64,000 bases of DNA from the IMG/VR virus record IMGVR_UViG_3300036770_003657, positions 335,797 through 399,796 of that record; one strand, written 5' to 3'. Position 1 is the first letter of the stretch, and each line of letters opens with the position of its first letter. Under the pieces are notes generated by a model. That model was given only the letters and a program-made list of their open reading frames with translations. It searched no databases and was not told the DNA's origin. The translations under genes and the position numbers were made by a program. Positions 30,701-61,591 of this stretch are shown here, piece after piece.

Positions 30701-31035
30701 ACAGTAATTATTTCTGGATCAGCTACTAGGGTTTCTACAGTATTGTTTGTCATGACAATACTATTGATTCTATCTTCAGGGCCAATGCTTAGAAAAGTAT
30801 AGGGATTGAATTCGGAAACAACTTCACCTAAAGTAACAATATAGGATAAGTTGTTCCACCTAGTAAAACCATCACCTATTTTAAAGTTTTTTTGATCTAG
30901 GTCAACCCCAATCTCGCCCTGTGCAAGAATCGGGTTAATATCTATCCAGTTTTGTCTTGAATCTCTTCTTAATTGAATCCTTTTGGCCATTATTGTCTCC
31001 AACTGTAGTTTGGAGATAGCCTCCAAACCGCCCAT
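18706..31035 (-). CDS. Giant tail fibre / receptor-binding protein (4,109 aa; alternative start at 30990)
   Basis: Mtd_N-like RIQLRRD...W...NPILAQGEIG...KIGDG; G/T/N-rich beta repeats; pectin-lyase-like beta-helix; C-terminal ADLAENY...VALQGRVP fibre tail; TAAATA at 31041-31046. Confidence 0.9.
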   Translation of the reverse strand: MGGLEAISKLQLETIMAKRIQLRRDSRQNWIDINPILAQGEIGVDLDQKNFKIGDGFTRWNNLSYIVTLGEVVSEFNPYTFLSIGPEDRINSIVMTNNTVETLVADPEIITVNVKTILSDNTPSLDPYTGTLIVSGGVGIGGDLNVAGDIVANSINVEEEILANIQGNITGNLFGDVFGDIYSDSGVKVLENGTNGTDATFTGELLGRITQTTGTSQISSLLLNGGFINSTIIGNSGPTLITGTVITASVKFVGKLEGNVVGDLYAADGTTKILDNGTGGPTNVLSYQPPVFYGNVEGSISGNFAGDIYAEDGITKVLENGTGGAPLDSGYVEAEFIGKVSGNITSYGLSRLDQVDINGGNIDATVIGAEEPRAITGTIIEATERFIGEFEGTIIGPSTGDIFAENVSVKVFENGTNGFDAKAYTDIILYKDTGGVVTETVILDRGTTGTDAMYTGNVTGDVTGDLTGDVDATNIETDILDVLDNATIENLTVNLETNLDGQVYAKANIGSTDTTTGTVVVTGGVGISENLHVGGNLDVTGTSNFTGTITSNDINADNIDANTLDTTGNVNIGGDLDVTGQATLGSLLLDDITVNNITVNNNVYIAEDLTVDGTSTLANVDINSGTIDNTRIGETTPSTIRSTLINTDGLNVNNQGEIRLKELTSNGNNYVGLRAPAGTTPEEFVNSYTLTFPRVLGVDGSILSLNRDGNKLEFVSADLFGGGQVAVSATNGDDNFDGINKPVKTIKRALQIASNLVYKQRNEFNDQTCFRDVGLIIDAIGYDLIYGSNWQSVKAGFTYSNATASAVLISQKDITIRALNYLLLKAVDTQSGTEATEVAASIQSITNILANTYAGDLINVVDVSYPVTDLVAGITYEIEVLGSTDWNAVAGTTGESYTVGDTFVAAVPGTGDGIAKIPTILPAITMPTPAGLPVGYVNAKDLLLDNIEYIVDQGTNYVNNTFLGFSYTGPTVTKCERDMSLVIEGAIYDIVLGTNLNTRQNQYSYDRQNQLGTFYNQKIQTAAALKQLYRESEQYVTSGTFFLSYKNKVQEIIDFLEEGYPAIDAVSFTDPSNAEVAVLNAKNQLQTNKAFIREEVIAWLIDTYPSYASTPGSIIDKCRRDVEFIVDAITYDVLYGGNSATYSNAEAYIFGAVLQLGAGEKAQTLAAYTRLQEIIGDIVNAVPITKSSTNLLTQDTSLYPATNSEQTIKCQDLVDIIIDVITDENTSSLNNKVFPDISSANPTTQLNFGLIQENKAAIITGVSQFITVEFNNFTYNEEKCARDIRYLVYSLAYDLMYGGNSQTIDAAKKYFSYGMGLPIFNDRQASAITYRYLKEEIINLVLENDLNAFGVGDPASSAAIDKAQELLGYVVTIIDQGPSQAPNTEYPNATPISPTKSDARAALLADKEIIQTETVAFVADYIPNEKRIVIAVASGDYYEDNPIIIPDNVSVVGAGLRACNIRPLNAGKDMLRVRNGCYFTEITFRDALDVNNIPSFTFDYAVAFDDPADPECSRVGYTRLPNNKPVISISPYVQNCSIISFLGGNGVLVDGSKVRTPNIPVNQIEAENPVEGPAPQQGKSMVGNAFTMLSFGGTGYRVINDAYAQIVSCFQIFCLNGSYCQSGGYLSITNSATNFGQFALRANGYSPNAFDFNKGIVVATGSAGAQQTITAIGFGDLPVQHYVIRFRNPVYRETYSTILNNKEELRDALITWIDSQVTANTAPYYTGFTYDQDTCRRDTLLVLEAVAYDVLTGGNSKSVEAGVAYSTSTVAALINQRTQNIAAFQELKSLTIALVHPDAQSRVGDLFDIIIDIIDSIINVPEIVDYSNIGDVTNSYKQVDDQVPFTPSNNVTIPGTSPAQIEPVINVNTNVITIPAHGFQNTEKIVYRANGNSLIKGLYDEQTYVIKILNANQFELYLDDGFEIKAKFTAPLPTGEHLLLKNIKEFFIDDLTESHVVYQKLQVEPPPIGQSYTFIPGRVIEGTTSGITPNRAYIFSWDPTTRSLVVSVEKVLVGENFIRNNFTLDTVIQYDNGSPAILNIDVTDVQNVDNLYTATFKILATTSGNELINLETLPSKQIWLHRPSIVNSSSHTWEYAGSGTDYNALPQNGGRTRVEYEQVSELPGRVYSSGTNELGDFKVGDFIKAENKTGNVQFTNTVSIAALDALKLAVGNITIEEFSADIDLGDNEVGGPSHNRLSTQLAVRSFLENRLGDFIDKELTTTTQPGGIPQLNALGKLSADQIPPLRNFLVYRSNGYRSRLNLVNTVPPTSILNGDLAIETYSGVSLTLDGVLVAVDGDLILQASSGATGRVVGGNNSTTVVIGSLGEFFDDTFDTVGEITLNGASTGLTPTLVGGIIPDQNTNYILSELDSKQILLLDPTQTYDFTGVTSVTGSNSQAQGTIEYIVEGVANALDNSNDPVTGLAGGSGYTQPPSGFYTDVPLTGGSGTGARADLFLSGGVVTNVVLTAGGSGYTTVDRLSANDANLNGRTGGSAFSVKVSQIQNRVYVDIVGALKFNANSIAPEFTEDANVVTKTTDQLDSTVVATFNAASTGSGGNVNTALSRITIVGHPFDDGDAVQYNAGFGTPLGGIVNNSIYYVKSIDADTIELYTTYSLSTKLTIVNSGAGNQTLTLSILDITKDTVYIPDHGFATGDAVKIIAADPPYGILTNSIFFVGSVTTNTFTIHEGRADAVASTLGLTIGAFNFTNTGTGVASFRKQSIKIIGVVDNASILAENWSSLSASNIDTTNIVSGIMSTTRLAIGTANSNTFLRGDSTWAKAVQKIKKPSVDSAITITGPFFDPGPGGIQEFYNEVTVGVDVVSGGQENANIPGHTNLGVASFNKSQFEVGTGGSQGAVGIKSGVVDAGTLDGQDGLYYLTPSNIIGQVPVDKGGTNIASYTVGDMLYASGSTIIQKLPIGDTNSVLNVQPVSLGSANKRPVWTDSITLNGLTVNGNVNITGAASTLNAYDIQMDDNNIELGSVEPISSRSGNINFTAIGALTTTITASTAGMIPGMTLSRVSGGQLGANPRVTAINGANLFTFTADTPPDQISPNGVAVVFNTGGITDATAAGGGITIKGTTDKLFRWIQSTSSWTSSENMDLATGKTYKINGVDVLSSTTLGSGVVNSSLTGVGTISTGTWQASIISPTYGGTGVNNGTKTITLGGNLTTSGAYASTFTMTAATSVTFPTTGTLATLAGTEALTNKTVNGMTISNSTGTFTLANAKTLTASNTMTFQATDGSTINFTTGGQVIYKAAPTIDDPTFNITYNGSGALTSVTLQSAYTTDFKTRFTSVGTTNRFSWLTNLNWNGSAFVKDNNLKSHWAIDKVITVTDTTSYIAFTYGGPTNLASADKFKVFGTGRIEMAGNISSTNTSTGTLIVTGGVAVTENLNVGGNFNVTGNTVIGGNLTVSGTTTTINTETIELADNIIVLNSNETAEPTQNAGIEIERGTDTNVSLLWDESVDKWTFGAGSTVIAGTFQGSVSGGLSGNADTATKLATARTIALTGDVSGSVTFDGSNNVSMTTTIGIDSVALGTDTTGNYIAAVSSGTPGSQTGTSGLTISGSGEGVTVNISHADTSSVGNLSSDNSGNTFIQDISFDFDGFGHVTSASVATATVSIGNGTLTVQGNNGLTGSGTFTANQSTAGTITLSHADTSSVGNLSSDNSDNTFIQDISFEFDGYGHVTAASVATATVSIGNGTLTVQGNNGLTGTGTFTANQSTAGTITLGHANSAITAGTVSDGGATRTLAFGGTFKIPSVTYDAYGHITGTNTITLTMPANPDTNTTYSAGTGLSLSGTTFNHSNSVTAGTISDGGATRTLAFGGTFKIPSVTYDANGHITGTSSITLTMPANPDTNTTYSAGTDLSLSGTTFNVSSATANTASTLVKRDASGNFSAGTITATFSGNLTGNVTGNVSGSSGSCTGNAASASTSSQVTINYNNDSNSTYQMLWGSGNSVYGTGGIYCNPATDTLYASVFNGVATQAKYADLAENYLADAKYEEGTVLMIGGVNEVTIGTDLTRKVVGVVSKNPAHLMNSELEGEHVVAVALQGRVPVKVRGKISKGDMLVSAGDGYAKAHDDPRMGMVIGKALEDFDGDEGVIEVVVGRL
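19420..20313 (-). repeat. Two in-frame tandem duplications in the fibre gene (2x231 nt and 2x216 nt)
   Basis: cactgctagt at 20061 and 20292 (231 apart); atctggattagctggcatagtcaatgt at 19471 and 19687 (216 apart). Confidence 0.9.
25580..28780 (-). repeat. Five phycobiliprotein-like helical repeats within the fibre
   Basis: Cys codons of the C-x-R-D motifs at 28729, 28111, 27682, 27196 and 25831; each followed by I/L..A/S..YD...G[GST]N. Confidence 0.75.
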
Positions 31036-31607: not shown

Positions 31608-32705
31608 CTAGAATTGAGGAAGTTCATCATAGTTAATAGCATCACTCATGACACCAATAACATAGTTAGTTGATTCGTTTTCCTGTAATGCTGTTTGTTT
31701 CTTACTAGTATCGCTATGTTTGTTAAACCACGGAATAGGATTGGTCTTGATGTGTGTAGCATATTTTAATCCTATTTCCTTTAGTGCTGATACTGCTGTA
31801 TAATCAACAAAATCCTTTAGAATGTTAGCATTAAGTCCAATAACAGGTCCACGCTTAAACAAGTAGTCAGCCCAAGCCTTTTCTTCTCGTATAACATCCA
31901 TATATAAGGCATAGACTTCTGCTTCACATTCTACTTTGGCCTGTGCGAACCTTGGATCTTCCTTGACCACTTGATTGATCAACCAGCCTGTCCATCCCTT
32001 GTGTAATAATTCATCCTGTAGGATAAGACTGATAATGTTGCCATTTCCAATAAAGATCTTGTTCTCTACCATGGCTAGGCTAGTAGCAAAACTTACCATA
32101 AATCGTAGTGCCTCAAGAGCATAACTGGCATTAAGTGCTAGCCAAATTGCTTTGATATGATGGTCTACAGCGACTTCTGTACCTGTTTCTTTGAAGCAAT
32201 TTAATTGATGTAACTGCTCATAGTATCGACCTACACTAGCAGCCATATCCACAATCTCTTGTGTGTCATGTATGGTGTTAAACACATCTTTAGGTACATT
32301 ATAAATGTTACGAATGATATGACTGTAGCTACGACTATGTATATTAGTCTCGAAGAATGTCCAGTTGTACACTAATGCTTCTAGTTCAGGTAAACTTACT
32401 ACTGGAGTAAAGATTTGACTGGGCCCACGTCCTTGTAAACTATCCAATGCTGTTTGACGCAATAAGTTACTAGTGAAAATATGTTTTACTGCTTCACTGG
32501 CTTCTTTAAAATCCTGAGCATCTTTAACTAGGCTGATCTCCTCTGGTACCCAAAAGAAACCACGTGCTGTTTTTTCAAAGTCTGCTATTTTATTATATTT
32601 GACTTCTTCAAATCGTTGTATTGTCACTGGACCTGCTGGGTCAAGGAACATTTTACGATGTAGGTAGTCTGTCTTTGTGTGTAAGTTATATTGTTGTTTG
32701 CTCAT
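31608..32705 (-). CDS. nrdB: Ribonucleotide reductase class Ia beta subunit
   Basis: FFWVPEE, D/E/H iron ligands (ETNIHSRSY, EALRF, QDELLH), ENESTNY. Confidence 0.97.
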   Translation of the reverse strand: MSKQQYNLHTKTDYLHRKMFLDPAGPVTIQRFEEVKYNKIADFEKTARGFFWVPEEISLVKDAQDFKEASEAVKHIFTSNLLRQTALDSLQGRGPSQIFTPVVSLPELEALVYNWTFFETNIHSRSYSHIIRNIYNVPKDVFNTIHDTQEIVDMAASVGRYYEQLHQLNCFKETGTEVAVDHHIKAIWLALNASYALEALRFMVSFATSLAMVENKIFIGNGNIISLILQDELLHKGWTGWLINQVVKEDPRFAQAKVECEAEVYALYMDVIREEKAWADYLFKRGPVIGLNANILKDFVDYTAVSALKEIGLKYATHIKTNPIPWFNKHSDTSKKQTALQENESTNYVIGVMSDAINYDELPQF

Positions 32706-35035
32706 AATACGCAGGAATCGCAGTCCTCCTCCATTTCTATCTCTGTGTAATCCATTTTACTTTCTATACTAGCACCATTGGTATACTTAATATCTGCCTT
32801 GGCGCCTTGTTTATCTATTAGGCTGTAATAGAATGTTTTGATTCCCCAAATATGTGCCTGCATAAGGTTTTTCGCTATCAATGTACTAGGTACTTTACGA
32901 TCAGGAAAATGTTTGGGACTATAAAATGTGTTTGTACTAATGCTTTGATCCACATAGGCTGCTAGAACTGCTGCTGTTTTAATATAGCCAACGCAGTCTG
33001 TTTGTTCCCACATTAGTTGATACTTGTTTTTAAGTTTGTGGTATTCTGGAACTACCTGTGTAAAACTACCTGCCTTACTTTCCTTAGTACTAATAAGGCT
33101 CATGGGTAATTCTATACCATTAGTGCTGTTGATTACTACACTGCTAGATTCAACAGGAGCAATAGCCATTAAGGTAGCATTACGCACACCATACTGTATC
33201 ATATTTTGTCTAAGTGGTTCCCAGTCTAGTTCTGGAGTAAAGTCTGCTAGTTCATTAACACCCTTGGCTCTACGCTCCCACGGAAAGACTCCTTTGCCAT
33301 AGTGGGTTAGTCTACTATCCTTGCATGGACCACGTTCTTTGGCTAATTCAACTGTGGCTTCTGTTAGATAAAATGCTTGATGTTCCATCCAACTTTTAAC
33401 TTCTGCTAGAGCATCCTTATCACCATACTTTAGGCCACGTTTGGCATGCCAGTAGGCCAAATTAGTAACACCAATACCTAATGGCTGTATTTCATCATTG
33501 CTTAATTTGCTCTGTATGCTTAAGTAATCTTGGTAATCAAGAATGTTACAAAGGCTACGCTGGAGTATACGGCAAGCACGACGCATATCCTCAGGGTTGC
33601 GGAAGCAGCCCCAGTTAATTGACCCCAAGGTGCATAAAGCGATGCGGCCTTCTTGATCATCAAGTCTTTTGAATGTGCGTGTAGGAAGCAGGATTTCACA
33701 GCATAAGTTACTTTGGTATATGGGATGATGCAGGGGATCAAATGGTCCTTGGTTCAATACGTTATCTATGAACACAAGGTATATGCGTCCTGTATCAGTT
33801 CGTTCCTTAAGTATGCCTCCCTTAAATACTTCCTCGGCACTCATAGTCTTTTTGCGTAGACCTGGTGTCTTCTCGTATTTAACATACAATTCTTCAAATA
33901 GTTCAACATCTCTATAAAATGCTTCATAGAGATCTGGAACTTCATTGGGGTCAAAAAATGTTATGTCTTTTTGTTCTCTGAATCTTCGCCAGAAGAAACT
34001 CGAAAGCACAACCCCATAATCCATATGTCGTACCCTGGTTTCCTCTGTTCCTTGGTTGTTTTTGAGAACAATGAGATCATCAAACTGATGATGCCAAATA
34101 GGATAAAACACAGTGGCACTAGCATTGCGTATTCCACCTTGACTGCAACTCCTTAAATCGCCGAACCACTTTTTGAGGAAAGGTAGCATGCCTGTATGCA
34201 TGATCTCTCCACCCCTAATCGGACTACCTAATGGTCTGAGGCGTCCTATTTCCAAACCTATACCAGCACGTTTGCTGGCATATTTAGCCATCATTTCGCC
34301 GCTAGCAAATATACTGTCAAGATCATCGTCACTGCGGATAAGCACACAGCTAGAAAACTGTTTGGTAGGAGTACCAAGACCAGCAAGCACAGGAGTGGCA
34401 AGAGTAAAGAGCCCATCAGAGGCAGCATTGTAATATTCCCTTATGTAACGCATACGAGCAGTGTTAGGTTCTTCCTTATGAAATATAGTGGCAGCGGCTA
34501 CCATATAACGTACTTGTGGAGTTTCGTAGGTTTCTTTTGTACTACGATTCTTTACAAGATACTTTTCAATAAGTTGTTCAATAGCAGCATAGCTATATTG
34601 GAAGTCTTTGTCGTGATCAATCATATCATTCATACGATTCCAATCAGCTTCAGTATACCACTCTAGTAGTTCTTTAGTATACAGACCAGTAGCTATGTTG
34701 CGTTTAATGATTTCATAAAGATGAGGTATTTCGCTACTACCATATACATCTTTACGTAGCATATGGTATCGTTGACGACCTGCTACATATTGATAGTTAG
34801 TGTTACCAATGTCTGGATTTGACTCCACATCAATAAGATCAACAATAGCACGTAAGGTAATTTCATCTATCTCTCTAGTAGTAATACCATCATAGAAATG
34901 AGGGTTACTACGTATTTCAATCATACTTTGGCTTACATCAGCAATGCCATTACATATTCTTGATACTTGGGCTTGCCATTTTGTGAGATCTAAAGGCTCT
35001 CGGCTACCATTACGTTTTACTACAGTTATATTCAT
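32702..35035 (-). CDS. nrdA: Ribonucleotide reductase class Ia alpha subunit
   Basis: ATP-cone VVKRNG, QFSSCVL, QSNLCCEI, C-terminal CDSC. Confidence 0.97.
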   Translation of the reverse strand: MNITVVKRNGSREPLDLTKWQAQVSRICNGIADVSQSMIEIRSNPHFYDGITTREIDEITLRAIVDLIDVESNPDIGNTNYQYVAGRQRYHMLRKDVYGSSEIPHLYEIIKRNIATGLYTKELLEWYTEADWNRMNDMIDHDKDFQYSYAAIEQLIEKYLVKNRSTKETYETPQVRYMVAAATIFHKEEPNTARMRYIREYYNAASDGLFTLATPVLAGLGTPTKQFSSCVLIRSDDDLDSIFASGEMMAKYASKRAGIGLEIGRLRPLGSPIRGGEIMHTGMLPFLKKWFGDLRSCSQGGIRNASATVFYPIWHHQFDDLIVLKNNQGTEETRVRHMDYGVVLSSFFWRRFREQKDITFFDPNEVPDLYEAFYRDVELFEELYVKYEKTPGLRKKTMSAEEVFKGGILKERTDTGRIYLVFIDNVLNQGPFDPLHHPIYQSNLCCEILLPTRTFKRLDDQEGRIALCTLGSINWGCFRNPEDMRRACRILQRSLCNILDYQDYLSIQSKLSNDEIQPLGIGVTNLAYWHAKRGLKYGDKDALAEVKSWMEHQAFYLTEATVELAKERGPCKDSRLTHYGKGVFPWERRAKGVNELADFTPELDWEPLRQNMIQYGVRNATLMAIAPVESSSVVINSTNGIELPMSLISTKESKAGSFTQVVPEYHKLKNKYQLMWEQTDCVGYIKTAAVLAAYVDQSISTNTFYSPKHFPDRKVPSTLIAKNLMQAHIWGIKTFYYSLIDKQGAKADIKYTNGASIESKMDYTEIEMEEDCDSCVL

Positions 35036-53943: not shown

Positions 53944-54370
53944 AGGCAGCAATTTAACAGCATTTGATTTGGATGGAGTATTCATTCCTGATTGTGACCA
54001 AATTCCAGATTTAGGTGATCACGAAGCCTATTTGAATTTGACTATGTATATGCAACCCGTATTCAAACCAGTAGGTGAATGGATCCTACTAACAGGTAGA
54101 CCAGCAGAATATGAGCACGTTACCAAAAGTTGGTTGCTCAAATATTTTACTAATCAACCCAAAATGATCCTTCATCAAAGAGATGCTGAAAAGGAAACTA
54201 ACGAAGAATACAAATTGCGTATGATTAAGGAACATGATATTGATGTCTATATAGAAAGTGATAAAAAAATCGTGGATCACTTAAAAGGTAATTTGGATGT
54301 GGATAAAAAGACTATACAGCATTTCAGCGAGTTCTGTGAGTTGTATTTGAACTACAACGCAGGAGCTTGA
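53936..54370 (+). CDS. HAD-superfamily phosphatase-like protein
   Basis: AFDLDGV, LLTGRP, K...IDVYIESD. Confidence 0.78.
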   Translation: MSKGSNLTAFDLDGVFIPDCDQIPDLGDHEAYLNLTMYMQPVFKPVGEWILLTGRPAEYEHVTKSWLLKYFTNQPKMILHQRDAEKETNEEYKLRMIKEHDIDVYIESDKKIVDHLKGNLDVDKKTIQHFSEFCELYLNYNAGA

Positions 54371-54395
54371 CAATATCTAAGTTTTCGCATATAAT
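54367..54395 (+). promoter_or_regulatory. Consensus sigma70 early promoter
   Basis: TTGACA (54367) -17- TATAAT (54390). Confidence 0.85.
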
Positions 54396-54423
54396 AGACT
54401 ATGGTTAACAAATAGGTGATTGT

Positions 54424-54675
54424 ATGCGAAAACTTGCCGCTTTTTTACTATCAATGAGCATTACTGGATGCTCTAGTATCCAATTTAAAGAGCCATTATG
54501 TCCTGGCACTAGAAGCTATGATGTACAACTCTGTAGGGGTGAAAAACCTTATATCATTCCTAATCCACCTGGATTCGCTTTTCAACAAGAAGCCAAATGC
54601 AACAAGTGTATAGACATAGATCAAAACTGTGTCTGGGGTGTACCACAACATTGTAAACCCAAATGGAGACAATGA
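54424..54675 (+). CDS. Cys-rich lipoprotein-like protein
   Basis: Lipobox-like ITGC; several Cys. Confidence 0.55.
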   Translation: MRKLAAFLLSMSITGCSSIQFKEPLCPGTRSYDVQLCRGEKPYIIPNPPGFAFQQEAKCNKCIDIDQNCVWGVPQHCKPKWRQ

Positions 54676-55043
54676 TGAAAATTACTGTGCGTAATCCATT
54701 ATATCCTATTCGTGATCGTTATTTCTTTGACATACCAGAGTTTAGGGAATATGAAGGTGTGGAAACTACGCTCAAACACATTGACAGCGTACAATACCTA
54801 TGCCTCACTACAGGCATAAAAGATTTTCCCGTTCGTGTAATTGATAGGAGTACGATAGTGAATAGCGAAAAACAACCACTTTTCGCCCTTGATGAATTTT
54901 TTGGTGTCACCGAACGTCTTAAGGTGGAAGGTAGTAAAGGTGCTGTATACGAACTAACTAAGACCAATGGCAAATGGGCCTGTACCTGTCCTGGTTTTGA
55001 ATACCGTAAGGATTGTAAGCATGTTAGAAACGCCGGAACATAA
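54672..55043 (+). CDS. SWIM zinc-finger protein
   Basis: VEGSKGAVY...WACTCPGF...CKHV. Confidence 0.8.
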   Translation: MMKITVRNPLYPIRDRYFFDIPEFREYEGVETTLKHIDSVQYLCLTTGIKDFPVRVIDRSTIVNSEKQPLFALDEFFGVTERLKVEGSKGAVYELTKTNGKWACTCPGFEYRKDCKHVRNAGT

Positions 55044-55269
55044 AGACCTATTGGGTCGTAAGGTTGGGGTTGGATCATTTGTGGCCTTTACCCAAAACAA
55101 TAGACTGTTCGTTGGTCGTGTAATAAAATTAAACAGACAAATGCTGCGTATTGAACGTATTAAACATACCAAATGGATGGCTGATCAGACCAATAAGTAT
55201 TCATATGATTGTGTGGTCATTCCAGATAAGGATGTGGACTTTTATATACTGAGGAATATTACAAAATGA
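55021..55269 (+). CDS. Hypothetical protein (SH3/KOW-like)
   Basis: DLLGRKVGVGSFVAF...GRVIK. Confidence 0.6.
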   Translation: MLETPEHKDLLGRKVGVGSFVAFTQNNRLFVGRVIKLNRQMLRIERIKHTKWMADQTNKYSYDCVVIPDKDVDFYILRNITK

Positions 55270-55466
55270 AAATGAGTAGCGTGGAAGTTGGCCTATTCAA
55301 ACTGCCTGGTGTAGTATTTGAGCGTGATGTTCTCACTCCAGAGAAAGTAGAACAGATCAATGCTTGGTGTGCGGAAAATAACTGCGGCAAGCAAATGACT
55401 GACCTACTTTGGAGTTTTAAAAAGCCCACACAGCGTGACATGTTCATACTACGGTGGAGTGAATAA
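55266..55466 (+). CDS. WFxLRW-family small protein
   Basis: Central AWC; ends RDMFILRWSE. Confidence 0.75.
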   Translation: MKMSSVEVGLFKLPGVVFERDVLTPEKVEQINAWCAENNCGKQMTDLLWSFKKPTQRDMFILRWSE

Positions 55467-55654
55467 TGTATACGATTAAGTCTGAGCACATCTTACTTCG
55501 TGCATCAACACACTATTATTCAGAAGTATGGCAGGGTGGTAAGTTAGGAATGCTAGATTGGCTTGATAAGGAGTTTGGTGCTAGAACAAATGACGGTGTT
55601 ATTTATTTTAAAACAGAAGCCAAGCGTAATTGGTTTGCTCTAAGATTCTCATGA
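55466..55654 (+). CDS. WFxLRW-family small protein
   Basis: Ends RNWFALRFS. Confidence 0.75.
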   Translation: MYTIKSEHILLRASTHYYSEVWQGGKLGMLDWLDKEFGARTNDGVIYFKTEAKRNWFALRFS

Positions 55655-55941
55655 GCGGATCCAGTTTAAAAAAAGTTGTGGATGACCTTTATCGTATACT
55701 TAATCGTAAGGCAAGATATTATTGGAGTGAATCTGGGCTAGAATTGAAACTAATTGCCGAAATGGATTGGGAAGATGGAACTGGTATCCACGCACCAGAT
55801 CAGCACGTAGTTGAACGTATAGCAGAATGGTGTTATAAGAATCGTTGTGGACGTCGTACTAGTTATGATACATTTAAGTTTCGTAATCGTAAACAAATTA
55901 CTTTGTTCCTACTACGTTGGGGTGAAGTAAAGGATGAGTAA
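55651..55941 (+). CDS. WFxLRW-family small protein
   Basis: EWC; ITLFLLRWG; ATGA start. Confidence 0.75.
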   Translation: MSGSSLKKVVDDLYRILNRKARYYWSESGLELKLIAEMDWEDGTGIHAPDQHVVERIAEWCYKNRCGRRTSYDTFKFRNRKQITLFLLRWGEVKDE

Positions 55942-56134
55942 GGATTGGCAGGGTTGGGAAATAGTTAGTATACAACAACCCGCTAATAGTCTAGTTGGCT
56001 GGAGTGAATGCTTGGCTTGGTGTGACCATACCCTAAAGCCTCATACCTATTACTATATGGGCGAGGGTGTGTTTACTTTTAAAAATGAATGTGATGCTAC
56101 ATGGTTTAAACTAAGGTGGGATAATGGAAATTAA
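55934..56134 (+). CDS. WFxLRW-family small protein
   Basis: AWC; DATWFKLRW. Confidence 0.75.
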   Translation: MSKDWQGWEIVSIQQPANSLVGWSECLAWCDHTLKPHTYYYMGEGVFTFKNECDATWFKLRWDNGN

Positions 56135-56285
56135 AAGACTAATGATTCCTTTGGATGATGATAGAATTGCCAGTTTGCTATTTAGGCGAGTCAACGATGG
56201 CAATGATTGGGTATGTGTGATGAACGATGAGTTTATGACAGATCTATCTGATTTATTGGAAGTAGAAGAACATACACTACAATGA
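56124..56285 (+). CDS. Small hypothetical protein (53 aa)
   Basis: Not in the track. MEIKRLMIPLDDDRIASLL...; coupled at both ends. Confidence 0.6.
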   Translation: MEIKRLMIPLDDDRIASLLFRRVNDGNDWVCVMNDEFMTDLSDLLEVEEHTLQ

Positions 56286-56542
56286 ACTACGACGACGTTA
56301 AATTCAATAACAAATTAGATGAGATGATAGAGCGAGCAGGTGGTCGTCTATATCTTGCTCACTTGGATCGTCCAGCACTAGAACGCTTTGTTAGAATAAT
56401 GCTGGAGGATATTGAAGAAGATATTAAAGGTTGGCGTGATAGTAAGGATGATAGTATGTATGGTGACTACTGGGAAGGCTATGCTCAAGGCTGTGCGGAT
56501 AGTATAGTAGCGGTGAGACTATGGGCACAAGACATAACCTAG
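56282..56542 (+). CDS. Hypothetical protein
   Basis: 86 aa; ATGA overlap. Confidence 0.7.
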   Translation: MNYDDVKFNNKLDEMIERAGGRLYLAHLDRPALERFVRIMLEDIEEDIKGWRDSKDDSMYGDYWEGYAQGCADSIVAVRLWAQDIT

Positions 56543-56796
56543 ATCACTTGCCCAGACAGGGGCAATATGAATTATTCATCAGTGCCAATCATATCTATTG
56601 TTTTGATGATCTTGATCATGTTAAATGGCCTAATAACGAGCAAACTCAGAGTTGGCTAGCCAAGCAAAATAGTGTACTATGTAGAGCATACATAACTCAA
56701 GATAATAACAAGCCCAGTGCTTATTATTTGGATCCTAAATTATATTTTATGTGGAAATTGGCTTGGAGTGAATATGCGAAACCGATCCGGATATAG
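56521..56796 (+). CDS. Diverged WFxLRW-family protein
   Basis: SWL; YFMWKLAWS; start uncertain. Confidence 0.55.
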   Translation: MGTRHNLDHLPRQGQYELFISANHIYCFDDLDHVKWPNNEQTQSWLAKQNSVLCRAYITQDNNKPSAYYLDPKLYFMWKLAWSEYAKPIRI

Positions 56797-56974
56797 TCTT
56801 CCTGATTATGCCTTATATCGTTATAAGTGGCAGTATAACGGCATAGCACCATTTGAGGAAATAAGCGATTGGTGTAGGAATAATCTTAAAGGCCATACTT
56901 ATATACCATATGAAACTATTTGGTTCAGTAATGAGCGGGACTATCATTGGTTTTTATTACGGTGGAGTTCATGA
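56774..56974 (+). CDS. WFxLRW-family small protein
   Basis: DWC; YHWFLLRWSS. Confidence 0.75.
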   Translation: MRNRSGYSLPDYALYRYKWQYNGIAPFEEISDWCRNNLKGHTYIPYETIWFSNERDYHWFLLRWSS

Positions 56975-57228
56975 AATATATAGAAGATCCTGACATCTGG
57001 TACAATCTACAGACACACTTTTCAAATAATTTTATTCCCCGCTTGGAGAATGATGATAAGGTTTGGGCAATGGCATTTAAACGGTGGCTAAAAGATCAAG
57101 GTGCTGACATTGAAATGAAATTGGGTTATAGATTAATTCGTAATAGTTTGGGCATAGCACCTCACTATGATCGATTGGTCTTTGAAGATGATCGAGATGC
57201 CACAATGTTTATATTGAGGTGGTCATGA
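56971..57228 (+). CDS. WFxLRW-family small protein
   Basis: RWL; DATMFILRWS. Confidence 0.78.
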   Translation: MKYIEDPDIWYNLQTHFSNNFIPRLENDDKVWAMAFKRWLKDQGADIEMKLGYRLIRNSLGIAPHYDRLVFEDDRDATMFILRWS

Positions 57229-57476
57229 AGCCAAGTGAATTACTGGCCATAGCAGAAAAATACTGGCTCACGGAGTATGATTTTAACAAGCCCGTAGCAC
57301 CGGATACGCCCTTTGTCACAGGTGACGGCCGCTATGATGCTATATTATATGACATGCTCGTTCAACATGGTGTAGAATTGATATTGAAACAGAGTAGACA
57401 TAGAAATTGGAAATTGGAAGATTACCGTGTGGTTGATAACAAAAAGTTTATGTGGTTTTTGATGAGGTGGTCATGA
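57225..57476 (+). CDS. WFxLRW-family small protein
   Basis: FMWFLMRWS. Confidence 0.78.
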   Translation: MKPSELLAIAEKYWLTEYDFNKPVAPDTPFVTGDGRYDAILYDMLVQHGVELILKQSRHRNWKLEDYRVVDNKKFMWFLMRWS

Positions 57477-57679
57477 AATTCCGTATGATCGATATGGGCT
57501 ATCGTCAGAGTCCCGACTATCCTTATAACTATAGGATTGAACTCTTTGATTATGGTTTCGAAGAACGCCGGCAGTTAAGTCTGTGGTTAAATGATCTTAA
57601 AATTCCCCATACCACAACTGGCAGTGTGATATACTTGGGCGAGAAATATGCTAATTGGTTTGCTTTGAGGTGGTCATGA
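57473..57679 (+). CDS. WFxLRW-family small protein
   Basis: LWL; ANWFALRWS. Confidence 0.78.
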   Translation: MKFRMIDMGYRQSPDYPYNYRIELFDYGFEERRQLSLWLNDLKIPHTTTGSVIYLGEKYANWFALRWS

Positions 57680-57894
57680 GTGAAAGAATTGATCATGTCA
57701 TTGACAAAAGAGGGTATGTGCTTATGGGAGATAGTAGGGGCATAGTCACACCATATGAACTAAGACAAGAGATTTATGAATGGGCTCAAAAGAATAACAT
57801 AGAAATAGAATACCATGGCAGTCTTGATAGAAAAGATCTATGGTATGTAAAAAACGATCAGCATCGTAATTGGTTTACTTTGAGGTGGTCATGA
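57676..57894 (+). CDS. WFxLRW-family small protein
   Basis: EWA; RNWFTLRWS. Confidence 0.78.
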   Translation: MSERIDHVIDKRGYVLMGDSRGIVTPYELRQEIYEWAQKNNIEIEYHGSLDRKDLWYVKNDQHRNWFTLRWS

Positions 57895-58232
57895 AAATAC
57901 AGGGAATAAAAAAACTTAGGGATGATCAAAAGATTTTTGTGTTGGGCAAGATTACTCCGCATGCGTTTCGTCAATATATGGATCGCTACTCAGATTTTGG
58001 TTGGGCTATGGAAACGAGAGCACATCATGCTATTAAACGTTTAATAAAACATGAGCATATGGAATTATACCAATGGTTGTTGAGTCAAAATTGTCAAACA
58101 ACCAATTGGATTGATGATGAAATATTTTCACTTCCATATCAATTCCGTAATCAGGTAGATTATTTTGATTGGGGTATAGGGTTTAAGTTTAATGATCCTG
58201 CAGAAACTTGGTTTACTTTGAGGTGGTCATGA
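57891..58232 (+). CDS. WFxLRW-family small protein
   Basis: QWL; ETWFTLRWS. Confidence 0.78.
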   Translation: MKIQGIKKLRDDQKIFVLGKITPHAFRQYMDRYSDFGWAMETRAHHAIKRLIKHEHMELYQWLLSQNCQTTNWIDDEIFSLPYQFRNQVDYFDWGIGFKFNDPAETWFTLRWS

Positions 58233-58462
58233 TGACTAGGTTAGTTTGTTTGCCTGCTCACGAAGGACCTGTGCTAAATGCTGCTATTTGGTTGAGACAG
58301 CACTTAAACATACCCCAGTATGAAACTATGGAAAGTCAGTTTGAAGAATATTTTAATTGTCGGGTGGTAAGAGAGCCACCACACGATTTGGTCTATGGTA
58401 AAATATTTGCTGTGTTTGACTGTGAGCGGGATGCTAATTGGTTCGTATTGAGGTGGTCGTGA
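58229..58462 (+). CDS. WFxLRW-family small protein
   Basis: IWL; DANWFVLRWS. Confidence 0.78.
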   Translation: MMTRLVCLPAHEGPVLNAAIWLRQHLNIPQYETMESQFEEYFNCRVVREPPHDLVYGKIFAVFDCERDANWFVLRWS

Positions 58463-58662
58463 GACAATTGAAGAAAGAACTATGGCCCTGTAGTGTTAGA
58501 GTAAACTTGCCACCCGAGGATATAACACCTGTTGAACTATGGTTAGCCCTACAGTTTGGTGCATTAAAGGATAGATGGAATGTGATTTATAGATTCAATC
58601 ATACAGAGTACTATTTTCGTAATCAAAAAGACGCTAATTGGTTCGCATTGAGGTGGGCGTAA
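58459..58662 (+). CDS. WFxLRW-family small protein (GTG start)
   Basis: LWL; DANWFALRWA; GTGA overlap. Confidence 0.75.
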   Translation: MRQLKKELWPCSVRVNLPPEDITPVELWLALQFGALKDRWNVIYRFNHTEYYFRNQKDANWFALRWA

Positions 58663-58925
58663 TGGCAGAAACTATACGCAAGTTCGCTGAACAAAGGAAA
58701 GTAAAGAACTGGGACCACACCACTGCCAAAAATGTACAAGAAGAATACCAAGCCTCTGGCTACTATCCTGTGCAGTTAGGCATGCTGGGCCTAGTGGGTG
58801 AATGGCAGGAATGCCATCGGTGGTGTCGTGACTATATAGGTGAGGATCACTATAGTTGGACAGGATCAACATTTTGGTTTGAAACAGAGCAAGCGGCTAT
58901 GTGGTTCGCATTGAGGTGGGCATGA
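58662..58925 (+). CDS. WFxLRW-family small protein
   Basis: RWC; AAMWFALRWA. Confidence 0.78.
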   Translation: MAETIRKFAEQRKVKNWDHTTAKNVQEEYQASGYYPVQLGMLGLVGEWQECHRWCRDYIGEDHYSWTGSTFWFETEQAAMWFALRWA

Positions 58926-59128
58926 GTAAAAGAGATTGGTGTAATATCGCTGTTAGTGTGCCTTGGCGTAGCCCTGGACAATGGCGTGACCTGCGTATTT
59001 GGCTACAGGAAAATGTCAACGATATGGACTACGATGCTGCCGGTGTAGATTTACAGCGTTACGATCAAAGAGTATTTTATTTTGCTAGACCGAAGGATGC
59101 AATGTGGTTCGCACTGAGATGGAGTTAA
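58922..59128 (+). CDS. WFxLRW-family small protein
   Basis: IWL; DAMWFALRWS. Confidence 0.78.
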   Translation: MSKRDWCNIAVSVPWRSPGQWRDLRIWLQENVNDMDYDAAGVDLQRYDQRVFYFARPKDAMWFALRWS

Positions 59129-59129
59129 T

Positions 59130-59519
59130 ATGATTGATAAAACAGTAGAAGAGTTCTGTAAGAGATATGAAGCAAGAATAGTACGCACCGGCCAGTATCA
59201 TCGTAGGGCAGAACCGAGTCCTTGGCGTATACCTGGCTATTATGAAACAAGTACCATAAAAAATGTCGACTTCTTCAATATTACTGAAGTGCCTATAACA
59301 AGTATTACCCTGCCAGAAGATCGGCTTGGTGCATTGGTAGAACACGAACAGCGTGTATCTGATTTTGTAGAACCTTTCCACCGAGGCCATGTTGGCAAAT
59401 ATCAACACATAGAAGCCCATATAGCAGAACAAGAAATTGAATGTCGCCTGCGTCATACTAATCCTGCACTGAAGAAGGCCTGGGACAATTATCAAATGCT
59501 ATTGAGGCTGGTAAGATGA
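59130..59519 (+). CDS. Hypothetical protein
   Basis: 129 aa; ends NPALKKAWDNYQMLLRL. Confidence 0.7.
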   Translation: MIDKTVEEFCKRYEARIVRTGQYHRRAEPSPWRIPGYYETSTIKNVDFFNITEVPITSITLPEDRLGALVEHEQRVSDFVEPFHRGHVGKYQHIEAHIAEQEIECRLRHTNPALKKAWDNYQMLLRLVR

Positions 59520-59746
59520 AGTGTGGCTGTTATGAGTGTGTAAAGAATGATTTACTTCTAGTTATGAGCACTATTATAGTGTGTGGTACCTGTGGTAATA
59601 AACGCTGTCCACATGCTACTAATCATTTACTGCCCTGTACCAATAGCAATGAGCCAGGACAATTAGGATCAAGGTATGGCACTTGGCCACATCCTGATCT
59701 GCCTTTTTATGAATTCATATCTAAAGGTCAAAAGGATAAAATCTAA
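59516..59746 (+). CDS. Cys-rich zinc-binding phage protein
   Basis: CGCYEC...CGTCGNKRCPHATNH...CTNSNEPGQ. Confidence 0.7.
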   Translation: MKCGCYECVKNDLLLVMSTIIVCGTCGNKRCPHATNHLLPCTNSNEPGQLGSRYGTWPHPDLPFYEFISKGQKDKI

Positions 59747-59756
59747 TATATAGTGT

Positions 59757-59975
59757 ATGAGCATACAAGTCACTGTGCCTAATCAACATACTGGTCAACT
59801 CATAGACATGGTAAGAGAATTAAAAAAACAGGGACTAGAACAAGGGCGGGATTTCGATTTTAGGTTTATGCCTGCTGTATATGATTTTGCTAACAATCAT
59901 AGTGAGCCAAGGCATGCGGTATTTGTTTTCTACGAGGAAAAATGGGCAACTTGGTTCACACTAAAATGGCTTTGA
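59757..59975 (+). CDS. WFxLRW-family small protein
   Basis: WATWFTLKWL. Confidence 0.75.
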   Translation: MSIQVTVPNQHTGQLIDMVRELKKQGLEQGRDFDFRFMPAVYDFANNHSEPRHAVFVFYEEKWATWFTLKWL

Positions 59976-60181
59976 ACAATTTAGGCTATCCTGATATATA
60001 TCCTGGTTGGCATTACTTACATAAGAAGTATAACATAAATCCTAAAGAAACAGACATTTATGAAATGTTTGCTTGGTGTGATGATAACATTGGTGAGTTT
60101 GGTGTAGACTGGGATTGGCACATTGATACCTTTTGCTTTCGTAGAGCCAAGGATGCTACAATATTTGGACTGAGGTGGTAA
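59972..60181 (+). CDS. WFxLRW-family small protein
   Basis: AWC; DATIFGLRW; TTGA overlap start (alternative ATG at 59966). Confidence 0.72.
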   Translation: MNNLGYPDIYPGWHYLHKKYNINPKETDIYEMFAWCDDNIGEFGVDWDWHIDTFCFRRAKDATIFGLRW

Positions 60182-60182
60182 T

Positions 60183-60485
60183 ATGGCTGGATTTAAAAGT
60201 AAACGAGCATTGTCATCAAGTAAGATGTTTAATATGCCTATGGTCATGGCTGACCCCAGTGTAAACATATTATATCGTACACCGGATGGTTGGTACACTG
60301 TGGCCTTTAACAAGGAAACTATAGACTGGTTCCGTAAAACCTATGATGACAAACAAGGAATAACCTGGCGTGAGACAGATGATGACAGTTATATCATATA
60401 TCGTCGTAGGTTAGAACTAACTGAAGAAATGGTCACTCTACTAAAACTAAAATACAGTGACACGCTGGATAATACAGATATATAA
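60183..60485 (+). CDS. Diverged WFxLRW-family protein
   Basis: DWF; VTLLKLKYS. Confidence 0.55.
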   Translation: MAGFKSKRALSSSKMFNMPMVMADPSVNILYRTPDGWYTVAFNKETIDWFRKTYDDKQGITWRETDDDSYIIYRRRLELTEEMVTLLKLKYSDTLDNTDI

Positions 60486-60491
60486 TACATC

Positions 60492-60776
60492 ATGTTAAAC
60501 AAAGTTAAAGCCTTTTGGCACCATAGTTATACCACAGATCGTAAGGCCTTCTATTTAGAAATGATGGCCAGTATATGTGTAGTAAGCACTACATTTGCCA
60601 TTGCTTGGATGGCCTATCATCCACCAATGCACTATATCTATCCTGTAAGTTTTGTAGGTGCTGTATTCAGTATCCTAGCATATTGGCGTAGACAATTGGC
60701 CTGGCCATTTTTACTTACTTGTTATTTTGCCTGTATTCATGTATTTGGATTTGGGCGTGCATTGGGGTATTGGTAA
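60492..60776 (+). CDS. Three-TM membrane protein
   Basis: Three hydrophobic segments. Confidence 0.7.
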   Translation: MLNKVKAFWHHSYTTDRKAFYLEMMASICVVSTTFAIAWMAYHPPMHYIYPVSFVGAVFSILAYWRRQLAWPFLLTCYFACIHVFGFGRALGYW

Positions 60777-61591
60777 TGCCTATAGCCATACAATTACCTG
60801 AAGTATTGAGTCGTGAGGAATTCGTTAATATGATTCCTAAAACAGCTCGCACTTTGGAAATAGGACCATATAACAACCCTACTCTTAAGCGTAGTGAATT
60901 TCCCAATGTCAAATATATGGATATGTTCACCGCAGAACAAATACTAGAGGATAAAGAACGTTATACTAATATAGGTGAGATGCCAGATCAAATAGATATT
61001 TTAGTTGATCCTGAACAGCGTCCTACATTTACTACTGATCTTAAGTTTGATTTTATCTACAGTGCTCATAACATTGAACATCATCCTGATATAGTATACC
61101 ATTTAAATGAAATAGCTAGCCTAGCACAAGGCATGCACAGTAGATACTTTCTCACTGTCCCAGATAAAAGATATTGTTTTGATTATTATCAACATGCTAG
61201 TGAATATACTGATATGATTGAAGCATATTTAGAACAGCGTCGCACTCATAGTTTTGGCAGCTATCTACGTCATACTGTATATGCTACACATAATAACATA
61301 TATGAGCATTGGATGGGTAGTCATGGATTGGATCCTAGAAGTATAGAAATTAATATTAATCATGCTACCACAATAAGACATAAAATTGATAATGCCAGAG
61401 ATGAACGTCATCGTAAGTTTGCTGACATACATGCTTGGTATTTTACCAATGAAAGTTTTATGTACACAATTAATATGTTGAATCAACTAGGCCTACAGCC
61501 TTGGAGGGTAGATGCTGTGACTCCTCCACAACATATGACACCAGAGTTCCACGCCGTTATGAGTCTAACACGCTATGTCAACAGAAGTTGA
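60776..61591 (+). CDS. Class I SAM-dependent methyltransferase-like protein
   Basis: LEIGPYNNP, YMD, FDFIYSAHNIEH, LTVPDKRYCFD; start moved to the TAATG overlap. Confidence 0.7.
   Translation: MPIAIQLPEVLSREEFVNMIPKTARTLEIGPYNNPTLKRSEFPNVKYMDMFTAEQILEDKERYTNIGEMPDQIDILVDPEQRPTFTTDLKFDFIYSAHNIEHHPDIVYHLNEIASLAQGMHSRYFLTVPDKRYCFDYYQHASEYTDMIEAYLEQRRTHSFGSYLRHTVYATHNNIYEHWMGSHGLDPRSIEININHATTIRHKIDNARDERHRKFADIHAWYFTNESFMYTINMLNQLGLQPWRVDAVTPPQHMTPEFHAVMSLTRYVNRS

What the first reader, a model, noticed from the sequence alone, without database searches (positions are those of the whole stretch)
57204..59128. Junction repeats are most similar between neighbours while gene bodies are not
Seen in sequence: junctions ending at 57228, 57476, 57679, 57894 and 58232 all end TGAGGTGGTCATGA, and 57870-57894 and 58208-58232 are identical over 25 nt. 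The next junctions switch to TGGTTCG(T/C)ATTGAGGTGG, with tggttcgcattgaggtgggc shared by the ends at 58662 and 58925. Distal members (55466, 56134, 59975) use different codons for the same peptide. Inference: this gradient suggests local homogenisation by unequal crossover or gene conversion at the junctions, meaning the motif acts at DNA level and not only as protein.
Basis: partly seen in the sequence, partly recalled or inferred. Interest (0 to 1): 0.62.

Follow-up and report, generated by a model that had tools for sequence, protein, structure and literature searches.

The report
Dual-coded gene junctions in phage cassette array
In a 400-kb freshwater jumbo phage, about 17 small related genes sit head to tail, and the last codons of each (Leu-Arg-Trp-Ser-stop) also spell the ribosome-binding site and start codon of the next gene. 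Selection on this double use, seen across the whole phage group, explains most of the junction identity, and the same junctions are where whole genes are swapped between related phages.

Summary
All the quoted junction strings and coordinates check out, and the junction similarity falls with array distance (Mantel r=-0.33, p about 0.001-0.002), while gene bodies show no neighbour effect in this window.

The 15-nt core (Leu TTG, Arg AGG, Trp TGG, Ser TCA, overlapping stop/start ATGA) is not a local product. It recurs in at least 120 IMG/VR viral contigs and in relatives whose orthologue is only 60-88% identical.

It is a dual-coded element. It forms the end of a conserved C-terminal helix, and it also supplies a Shine-Dalgarno sequence (GAGG at -9, the genome's own SD register) and the start of the next gene. 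Arg is AGG in 45/50 junctions where the next start lies 2-5 nt away, against 9% genome-wide.

Once these constrained codons are set aside, the neighbour effect is small: +2-5 points of identity, and not significant at free synonymous sites.

A DNA-level role is still supported in another form. Gene order is shuffled between relatives. Blocks of homology begin and end at the junctions, and metagenome contigs join junction to junction in register. This resembles a coding analogue of the PeSL shuffling elements of T4-like phages.

The parts
54367..54395 (+). sigma-70-like promoter (12/12 match to consensus hexamers, 17-nt spacer) upstream of the + strand small-gene block; candidate operon promoter
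   Evidence: no terminator-like site on + strand inside the family run except a weak one at 59342
55266..55466 (+). family gene g01 (66 aa, ends MFILRWSE); SD for next gene made by TGG-AGT (GGAG at -10)
55466..55654 (+). family gene g02 (62 aa, ends WFALRFS); ATGA overlap
55651..55941 (+). family gene g03 (96 aa, LRW followed by 6 extra residues)
55934..56134 (+). family gene g04 (66 aa, ends WFKLRWDNGN); AAGGTGG 4 nt before next ATG
56521..56796 (+). degenerate family gene g05 (91 aa, MWKLAWSE...)
56774..56974 (+). family gene g06 (66 aa; orthogroup 36)
56971..57228 (+). family gene g07 (85 aa; orthogroup 2)
57225..57476 (+). family gene g08 (83 aa; orthogroup 40, 80% aa to L001)
57473..57679 (+). 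family gene g09 (68 aa; orthogroup 49)
57676..57894 (+). family gene g10 (72 aa; orthogroup 54, 89% aa to L004)
57891..58232 (+). family gene g11 (113 aa; orthogroup 28); absent in a lake-metagenome variant (joint 57892->58242)
58229..58462 (+). family gene g12 (77 aa; orthogroup 41)
58459..58662 (+). family gene g13 (67 aa, GTG start overlapping stop as GTGA)
58662..58925 (+). family gene g14 (87 aa; TAATG one-base overlap upstream)
58922..59128 (+). family gene g15 (68 aa; orthogroup 1, found in L001-L010; AF2 model beta-alpha-beta-beta-alpha, pLDDT 85)
59757..59975 (+). family gene g16 (72 aa, ends WFTLKWL)
59942..60181 (+). family gene g17 (ends IFGLRW; start 59942 or 59966 uncertain)
57214..57228 (+). 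junction core: Leu-Arg-Trp-Ser codons + stop = SD (GAGG at -9) + ATG of g08
57462..57476 (+). junction core (Met instead of Leu) = SD + ATG of g09
57665..57679 (+). junction core = SD + ATG of g10
57870..57894 (+). junction, 25 nt identical to 58208-58232 = SD + ATG of g11
58208..58232 (+). junction, 25 nt identical to 57870-57894 = SD + ATG of g12
58448..58462 (+). junction core variant (TCG-TGA gives GTG start of g13)
58638..58664 (+). junction with the 20-nt string shared with 58901-58920; stop TAA overlaps ATG of g14 by one base; an 18-nt in-register joint to 58902 seen in source-like metagenome
58901..58925 (+). junction (GCA-TGA) = SD + ATG of g15
56124..56542 (+). two non-family small genes (56124-56285, 56282-56542) interrupting the array; the second has orthologues in L002
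59130..59746 (+). two non-family genes (59130-59519; Cys-rich 59516-59746) interrupting the array

Best explanation
The region is a hyperplastic block of a T4-like jumbo phage (399,796 bp). It holds a probable operon of about 17 paralogous small genes of 62-113 aa with no known function. They share a small alpha/beta fold that ends in a conserved helix, (D)A-x-W/M-F-x-L-R-W.

There is no intergenic DNA. The stop of each gene overlaps the start of the next (ATGA, GTGA or TAATG). The codons for Leu-Arg-Trp-Ser therefore do three jobs.
1. They finish the helix of gene n. This rests on protein-level conservation and a structure model.
2. They supply the Shine-Dalgarno sequence GAGGTG and the start codon of gene n+1, giving translational coupling. 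This is shown by position and codon statistics; the coupling itself is inferred.
3. As a 15-25-nt direct repeat every 200-340 nt, they provide the only place where cassettes can be gained, lost or swapped without breaking either neighbour. The breakpoint mapping is shown. The claim that homologous recombination by the phage's own UvsX/RecA-like system uses the repeat as substrate is inferred.

Jobs 1 and 2 are under purifying selection across the whole phage clade. The residual neighbour excess is small. It is compatible with occasional junction-to-junction exchange, with shared ancestry of neighbours, or with both.
For: Context
- T4-like tail sheath, baseplate wedge and DNA polymerase. The nearest polymerases, at 47-51% aa, are from Sinorhizobium phage Phosso and Agrobacterium phage Atu_ph07.
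- The family is confined to one locus of the genome.

Protein level
- 59-sequence alignment with nearly invariant W, F, L, W.
- AF2 model with pLDDT 85, C-terminal helix at 57-67.
- Arg is also written with CGN codons or replaced by Lys.
- Distant members in Phosso end in LRW written CTG-CGC-TGG.

RNA level
- The genome's SD profile peaks with GGAG at -10. The array's GAGG at -9 is the same register.
- Arg is AGG in 45/50 junctions whose next start lies 2-5 nt after Trp, against 6/15 otherwise (Fisher p=2e-4). Genome-wide AGG makes up 9.2% of Arg codons.
- Where the start lies 7-8 nt away, Ser is AGT, which makes GGAG instead.
- The last residue is constrained to xCA (Ser, Ala, Thr) by the ATGA overlap.

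Clade-wide consensus
- At least 120 IMG/VR contigs hold the exact pattern, against single figures expected by my rough estimate (not computed).
- Several contigs carry it in arrays with 200-240-nt spacing. In 501 non-ascertained junctions AGG and the xxATGA ending dominate.

DNA level
- Orthogroup order differs in nearly every relative.
- In contigs 90-97% identical to each other, 5 of 5 indels or replacements have a breakpoint in the junction core, and 2 have both. One is a clean chimeric junction.
- Among 113 contigs, right ends of homology blocks peak at -5 to +4 of a family stop (55/119) and left ends at -25 to -6 (52/131), against a background of 10%.
- Contigs from four freshwater, lake or subsurface metagenomes join junction to junction. 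23/30 joint ends lie within 27 nt of a family stop (p=8e-12), and 5/9 well-supported joints are in register.
- The phage has a RecA/UvsX-like gene.
Against: - No expression, ribosome-profiling or recombination data exist. Coupling and recombination are inferred from sequence.
- Breakpoints at gene boundaries would also be seen if random recombinants were merely filtered by selection for intact genes.
- Only 2 of 5 mapped events have both ends in a junction.
- Many metagenome joints have short sides (20-24 nt) on a repeated motif and may be alignment artefacts. Contigs come from mixed populations, so they show standing variants, not events.
- The host, and hence its anti-SD sequence, is unknown.
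- The protein function is unknown. There are no Pfam hits and only one weak PHROG hit in ten proteins. The fold matches only generic ACT/ferredoxin-like domains at Z about 6.
Confidence: 0.72

Rival explanations
1. One reading: junction identity and its decay with distance are produced mainly by local homogenisation between nearby junctions, through gene conversion or unequal crossover.
For: - Window neighbour excess: Phe+x codons identical in 3/14 adjacent pairs against 0.52 expected, p=0.007. Free-codon nt identity is 0.567 against 0.491, p=0.007.
- With geometry matched across 39 loci, Leu/Arg synonymous identity is 0.79 against 0.74, p=0.0035.
- Orthologues whose tails match the local neighbour rather than each other: g10 has x=ACT like g11 here, but x=ATA like its upstream neighbour in L004. 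g11 and g12 behave likewise.
- A lake-metagenome contig carries the g12 body with a g07-like tail, and there is an 18-nt in-register joint 58638->58902.
Against: - The same core is the consensus in at least 120 contigs and in distant relatives, so identity needs no local process.
- Free synonymous sites show no neighbour effect in 426 adjacent pairs (z=0.6).
- The orthologue-versus-neighbour test is not significant (p=0.07-0.11).
- The effect size is only 2-5 points of identity.
- The neighbour effect also reaches codons -14 to -9 and, weakly, the bodies. A junction-limited process does not predict that.
Confidence: 0.15
2. Neighbour similarity is left over from tandem duplication. Adjacent genes are the youngest paralogues. 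Their bodies diverged fast under diversifying selection while the constrained tails kept the ancestral nucleotides.
For: - The neighbour effect extends upstream of the tail (codons -14 to -9, z=4.3) and weakly into bodies (z=1.9, p=0.04) across 81 loci.
- Two orthogroup-2 copies lie in one contig, L001.
Against: - In this window the bodies show no neighbour effect (p=0.49). The g10 and g11 bodies are barely alignable.
- Gene order is shuffled between close relatives, so present adjacency is not a stable record of duplication history.
Confidence: 0.1
3. The junction conservation is due to protein-level selection on the C-terminal peptide alone, and the nucleotide identity is a by-product of codon bias.
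For: The peptide is conserved even where it is written with other codons. The C-terminal helix is the best-predicted part of the model.
Against: - The codons used are rare in this genome: AGG 9%, TTG 13.5%, TCA 13%.
- Their use depends on where the next start codon lies (45/50 against 6/15).
- The final residue is dictated by the ATGA overlap.
Confidence: 0.03

Closest known systems
PeSL (promoter-early stem-loop) cassettes of T4-type phages (Arbiol et al. 2010, PMC2839356; Comeau et al. 2014, PMC4122927)
   Same: Both are short conserved elements repeated between small ORFan genes in hyperplastic regions of T4-like phages. Indels and replacements between close relatives are bounded by the element. 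The element carries expression signals for the gene it brings along.
   Different: PeSLs are about 100 bp, intergenic, and made of a sigma-70 promoter plus a terminator stem-loop. Here the element is 15-25 nt and lies inside the coding sequence of the upstream gene. It carries translation signals (SD and start), not transcription signals. No promoter or terminator sits at the junctions. Mini-circles have not been looked for.
Translationally coupled overlapping genes (ATGA four-base overlap with the SD inside the upstream ORF), general in bacteria and phages
   Same: The stop and start codons overlap. An SD-like GAGGTG lies at the genome's usual register. Codon choice in the upstream gene is bent towards the SD.
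   Different: Ordinary coupled pairs involve unrelated neighbours. Here the SD-bearing codons are also a conserved structural motif of a paralogue family, repeated up to about 20 times per genome and conserved at nucleotide level across a whole clade.
Concerted evolution of tandem gene arrays by gene conversion or unequal crossover
   Same: Tandem direct repeats, an excess of neighbour similarity, and a few orthologues whose tails match local neighbours.
   Different: The homogeneous tract is tiny and explained mostly by selection. Formal tests of conversion are borderline. Bodies are not homogenised at all.
Integron gene cassettes (attC-bounded)
   Same: Small promoterless cassettes sit in one orientation behind a common promoter, and their order and content vary between relatives.
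   Different: No integrase or attC-like imperfect inverted repeat was seen. The junctions are coding and recombination would be homologous. This resemblance comes from general knowledge and was not tested further.

Membership tests
PeSL-type modular shuffling elements of T4-like phages | Lies among small non-essential ORFs in a hyperplastic region of a T4-like myovirus | tested here: met
   T4-like structural and replication genes. The array consists of small ORFs without database family. Content is variable between relatives.
PeSL-type modular shuffling elements of T4-like phages | Element is intergenic and made of a sigma-70-like early promoter plus a stem-loop terminator (~100 bp) | tested here: not met
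   Junctions are coding, with a 4-nt gene overlap. The promoter and terminator scan finds none at the junctions and no more than shuffled controls.
PeSL-type modular shuffling elements of T4-like phages | Insertions, deletions and replacements between close relatives are bounded by the element | tested here: met
   5/5 events have at least one end in the junction core. Homology-block ends peak at junctions. Metagenome joints lie at junctions.
PeSL-type modular shuffling elements of T4-like phages | Excised mini-circles carrying one cassette and one chimeric element | not testable with these tools
   Needs outward-facing PCR or raw long reads. Only assembled contigs were on hand.
Translationally coupled overlapping gene pairs | Stop of the upstream gene overlaps or abuts the start of the downstream gene | tested here: met
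   ATGA, GTGA or TAATG at 10 of the window's junctions. N-termini of orthologues begin exactly at that ATG whatever the upstream gene.
Translationally coupled overlapping gene pairs | Shine-Dalgarno sequence inside the upstream ORF at functional spacing, with codon choice shaped by it | tested here: met
   GAGG at -9 matches the genome's GGAG peak at -10. AGG is used in 45/50 against 6/15, and against 9.2% genome-wide.
Translationally coupled overlapping gene pairs | Downstream translation depends on upstream translation | not testable with these tools
   No RNA or ribosome data. No RNA runs hold the stretch.
Concerted evolution by gene conversion | Paralogous tracts within a genome are more alike than orthologous tracts between genomes | tested here: inconclusive
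   Mean D=+0.03 to +0.04 over 17-18 orthogroups, sign-flip p=0.07-0.11. Individual cases are suggestive.
Concerted evolution by gene conversion | Similarity at synonymous sites decays with distance after controlling for amino acids and constraints | tested here: inconclusive
   Free codons: z=0.6, not significant. Leu/Arg codons with geometry matched: z=2.8, p=0.0035. Window alone: p=0.09.
Any curated protein family (Pfam-A, PHROGs v4) | Significant profile match | tested here: not met
   No Pfam hit above cut-off. One weak PHROG hit (E=0.003) in ten proteins. Atlas and BFVD neighbours are all uncharacterised viral proteins.

The most novel reading that the evidence does not exclude
The junction is a coding 'universal linker'. 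One 15-25-nt string is at once the end of a structural helix, the ribosome-binding site and start of the next gene, and the homologous-recombination site. The last role would let a widespread clade of freshwater jumbo phages insert, delete and reorder small accessory genes scarlessly inside an operon that has no intergenic DNA. That would make it a translation-level, in-frame counterpart of PeSLs or integron attC sites. On this reading the conserved C-terminal peptide is partly maintained because it keeps cassettes exchangeable.
Probability: 0.4. Interest if true: 0.72.

Novelty: new variant of a known kind. Interest (0 to 1): 0.55.

Why it matters
Hyperplastic regions are where large phages keep their fast-changing accessory genes, which often act on the host or against its defences. 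How such genes are shuffled without wrecking their neighbours is understood for only a few systems, PeSLs among them. This case has no spacer at all. The exchange point lies inside a coding sequence that also carries the translation signals for the next gene.

If the mechanism holds, three things follow:
- It explains why an otherwise very divergent protein family keeps an almost invariant C-terminus at nucleotide level.
- It gives a simple sequence signature for finding such arrays in metagenomes. One pattern found at least 120 contigs.
- It warns that junction identity in tandem arrays should not be read as gene conversion before dual-coding constraints are removed.

Practically, short-read assemblies break at these junctions. 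Gene order in such regions of metagenome-assembled phage genomes should therefore be treated with care.

Tried and rejected
- **Database matches.** Near-identity and protein searches of the 'phages' collection with the array and with g14 gave no match. Pfam and PHROGs gave nothing usable on ten family members.
- **Finding relatives.** Single queries x18, g11 and g09 found no relatives.
- **Fold searches.** Foldseek against PDB found nothing at E<=0.001. VIA-align wide gave only generic ACT, ferredoxin-like, RRM and KH-like sandwiches at Z<=6.4. BFVD gave only uncharacterised phage proteins. No function could be assigned.
- **RNA families.** Rfam found nothing in 54000-61000, so a known structured RNA at the junctions is rejected.
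- **Linkage of the x codon.** I considered that the variable x codon travels with the downstream cassette, which would place the crossover upstream of x. This is rejected: genes upstream of the same orthogroup carry different x codons in different genomes, so crossovers lie mostly in the 15-nt core.
- **Chance.** Chance was considered for the 25-nt identity. Given the consensus, only the Phe and x codons are free. The neighbour excess is modest but significant.
Full report
**What is there**

The window is the last 64 kb of a single-contig virus record of 399,796 bp with 36.6% G+C. CheckV rates the record complete. It is a T4-like jumbo myovirus. PHROG profiles identify tail sheath, baseplate wedge and a gp43-type DNA polymerase. 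The closest polymerases, at 47-51% aa, belong to Sinorhizobium phage Phosso and Agrobacterium phage Atu_ph07. Near-identical words occur in subsurface, lake and freshwater metagenomes.

From 55266 to 60181 the + strand carries about 17 small paralogous genes of 62-113 aa. All end in (D)A-x-W/M-F-x-L-R-W plus 0-10 residues. The family occurs nowhere else in the genome. Four unrelated small genes interrupt it.

A perfect sigma-70-like promoter lies upstream at 54367-54395, and no convincing terminator lies inside the array. Rfam finds nothing.

**Check of the observation**

The one exception is that the member ending at 59975 encodes Leu-Lys-Trp rather than Leu-Arg-Trp.

- Over the last ten codons ending at Trp, nucleotide identity falls with rank distance (Mantel r=-0.33, p=0.0014). 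Identity of synonymous codons does the same (r=-0.33, p=0.0018). Amino-acid identity does not fall significantly (p=0.11).
- Adjacent genes share identical Phe+x codons three times in 14 pairs, against 0.52 expected (p=0.007).
- Bodies show no neighbour effect in the window (p=0.49).
- The two genes with 25 identical terminal nucleotides have bodies only 27% identical over 48 residues.

**What the junction is**

The genes have no spacers. The stop overlaps the next start as ATGA, or as GTGA once and TAATG once. N-termini of orthologues in other genomes begin exactly at that ATG, whatever gene lies upstream.

The genome uses classical Shine-Dalgarno sites, with GGAG peaking at -10 and AGGA at -11/-10. 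In the junction, Arg-Trp written AGG-TGG puts GAGG at -9, which is the same register on the anti-SD.

The codons involved are rare in this genome: AGG is 9.2% of Arg, TTG 13.5% of Leu and TCA 12.9% of Ser. Their use depends on geometry. In seven independent genomes Arg is AGG in 45 of 50 junctions where the next start lies 2-5 nt after Trp, but in 6 of 15 otherwise (Fisher p=2e-4).

Where the next start lies 7-8 nt away, Ser is AGT, and TGG-AGT then gives GGAG at about -10. The last residue is whatever xCA encodes (Ser, Ala, Thr), because CA-TGA makes the ATG.

The peptide is also under protein-level selection.
- Arg is sometimes CGN and often replaced by Lys.
- Distant members in the cultured phage Phosso end in the same peptide, written CTG-CGC-TGG.
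- In an AlphaFold model (pLDDT 85, beta-alpha-beta-beta-alpha) the motif is the well-predicted C-terminal helix.

The fold matches only generic ACT/ferredoxin-like sandwiches (Z up to 6.4) and uncharacterised phage proteins, so the biochemical function is unknown.

**Is the identity local or clade-wide?**

It is clade-wide. Ten IMG/VR contigs carrying orthologues of g15 at 60-88% aa identity hold arrays with the same core.

By my rough estimate (not computed), chance would give single figures. Many contigs carry several copies 200-240 nt apart. In 104 non-redundant loci with 639 family genes, the 501 junctions not used for ascertainment still prefer AGG (230 of 351 Arg codons) and the xxATGA ending.

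Junction identity therefore needs no local homogenisation.

**How much neighbour effect remains?**

- With the SD-bearing codons excluded, the window gives nt identity 0.567 against 0.491 (p=0.007) but synonymous identity p=0.09.
- In 81 loci with 426 adjacent pairs, tail identity is 0.532 against 0.512 (z=4.4) and amino-acid identity z=4.4. Free synonymous sites give z=0.6.
- A similar effect is present further into the gene (codons -14 to -9, z=4.3) and weakly in bodies (z=1.9).
- Restricting to junctions of identical geometry, the Leu/Arg codons still show an excess, 0.79 against 0.74 (p=0.0035).
- A test asking whether an orthologue's tail resembles its own neighbours more than the other genome's orthologue does gives a positive but non-significant trend (p=0.07-0.11). 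Suggestive single cases are g10, g11 and g12.

The gradient is thus real but small, and its cause is not resolved. Occasional exchange and shared ancestry both fit.

**DNA-level role: cassette shuffling**

Orthogroup maps show that gene order and content differ in almost every relative. For example, g15 has a different neighbour on one or both sides in nearly every genome.

Contigs L001, L002 and L005 are 90-97% identical to each other. All five indels or replacements among them have at least one breakpoint in the junction core and two have both. In one, the junction is a clean chimera of the two parental junctions.

Among 113 contigs, right ends of homology blocks peak at -5 to +4 of a family stop (55 of 119). 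Left ends peak at -25 to -6 (52 of 131). The background is 10%.

Contigs of four metagenome runs laid on 55200-60200 show these variants:
- g11 is missing (57892->58242).
- g14 and g15 are missing in two studies (58653->59120).
- g13 is followed by g07 (58661->56971).
- g07 is followed by the gene at 59130 (57229->59135).
- The g12 body carries a g07-like tail (58411->57178).
- A joint 58638->58902 has 18 nt that fit both sides.

Of 30 joint ends, 23 lie within 27 nt of a family stop (p=8e-12). Of nine joints with sides of 28 nt or more, five are in register within 6 nt. The phage encodes a RecA/UvsX-like protein.

Because the genes overlap, any exchange that keeps both neighbours intact must cross over inside the junction. 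These data show where exchanges end. They cannot separate a mechanistic preference from selection on the products. They also come from mixed populations and assembled contigs, and some joints have short sides.

**Comparison with what is known**

The nearest described system is the PeSL of T4-type phages. It is a conserved promoter-terminator cassette between ORFans of hyperplastic regions that mediates modular shuffling and forms mini-circles (PMC2839356; PMC4122927). The present element shares the setting and the shuffling pattern. It fails the defining composition: it is coding, 15-25 nt long, and carries translation signals, not transcription signals.

ATGA overlaps with an SD inside the upstream gene are ordinary (established knowledge). 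What is unusual is that the SD-bearing codons are a conserved family motif repeated many times and kept at nucleotide level across a clade. I found no description of this family or arrangement, but the literature check was limited to two searches.

**Verdict**

The best account is a dual-coded junction for translational coupling that also serves as the cassette boundary for recombination. Local homogenisation is at most a minor contributor. I rate it a new variant of a known kind, with interest about 0.55.

Noticed in passing
window 54367-54395 (+) and 60457-60486 (+): A perfect (12/12) sigma-70-like promoter lies upstream of the small-gene block and an 11/12 one just after it. This suggests the array is one early-type transcription unit.
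   Followed up: partly
window 5976-7853 (-): Phage-encoded full-length Hsp70/DnaK homologue (Pfam HSP70, E=1.7e-260). Ribonucleotide reductase large and small subunits lie at 32702-35035 and 31608-32705 (-).
   Followed up: no
window 18706-31035 (-); genome G000 103123-123172, 128514-146517, 52842-67245: Giant ORFs of 4109 aa (in the window) and 6682, 6000 and 4800 aa elsewhere in the 400-kb genome. They were not characterised.
   Followed up: no
window 59957-59975; L006 8655-8664, 9106-9115, 10013-10022: A second junction geometry. Where Arg is replaced by Lys, the Lys-Trp codons (AAA-TGG) themselves contain the next gene's ATG, giving a longer overlap with no obvious SD in the motif.
   Followed up: partly
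window 59516-59746 (+): A Cys-rich 76-aa protein with several CxxC pairs is embedded in the array. It has orthologues at about 57% in L001 and L002. It is not a family member.
   Followed up: no
L143 1609-1644, L145 1074-1109, L147 1642-1677 (Sinorhizobium phage Phosso); L144, L146, L148 (Agrobacterium phage Atu_ph07): Distant family members exist in cultured jumbo phages: 24 profile hits in Phosso and 3 in Atu_ph07. In the three Phosso loci inspected, members end in LFKLRW plus Ser or Leu, and one has the AGG-TGG-xx-ATGA junction. These phages could serve for experiments.
   Followed up: partly
window 57000-59100, run X1 (tables 2 and 8): In the metagenome that holds 93% of the stretch, the assembled pieces across the array are only 114-373 nt long. 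Their depths vary about fourfold between neighbouring cassettes. Short-read assembly fragments at the junctions, and cassettes seem shared by co-occurring strains.
   Followed up: partly
L003 8001-8207 and 8204-8416: Two adjacent genes in a relative share an identical 27-nt tail. The second was not picked up as a g15 relative by tblastn. This is the same pattern as g10 and g11 in the window.
   Followed up: partly
window 55266-60181: Phe is written TTC in 7 of 16 family tails, against 19% genome-wide, and five of these are consecutive (g12-g16). The cause is unknown. It could be foreign origin of these cassettes or a shared tract.
   Followed up: partly
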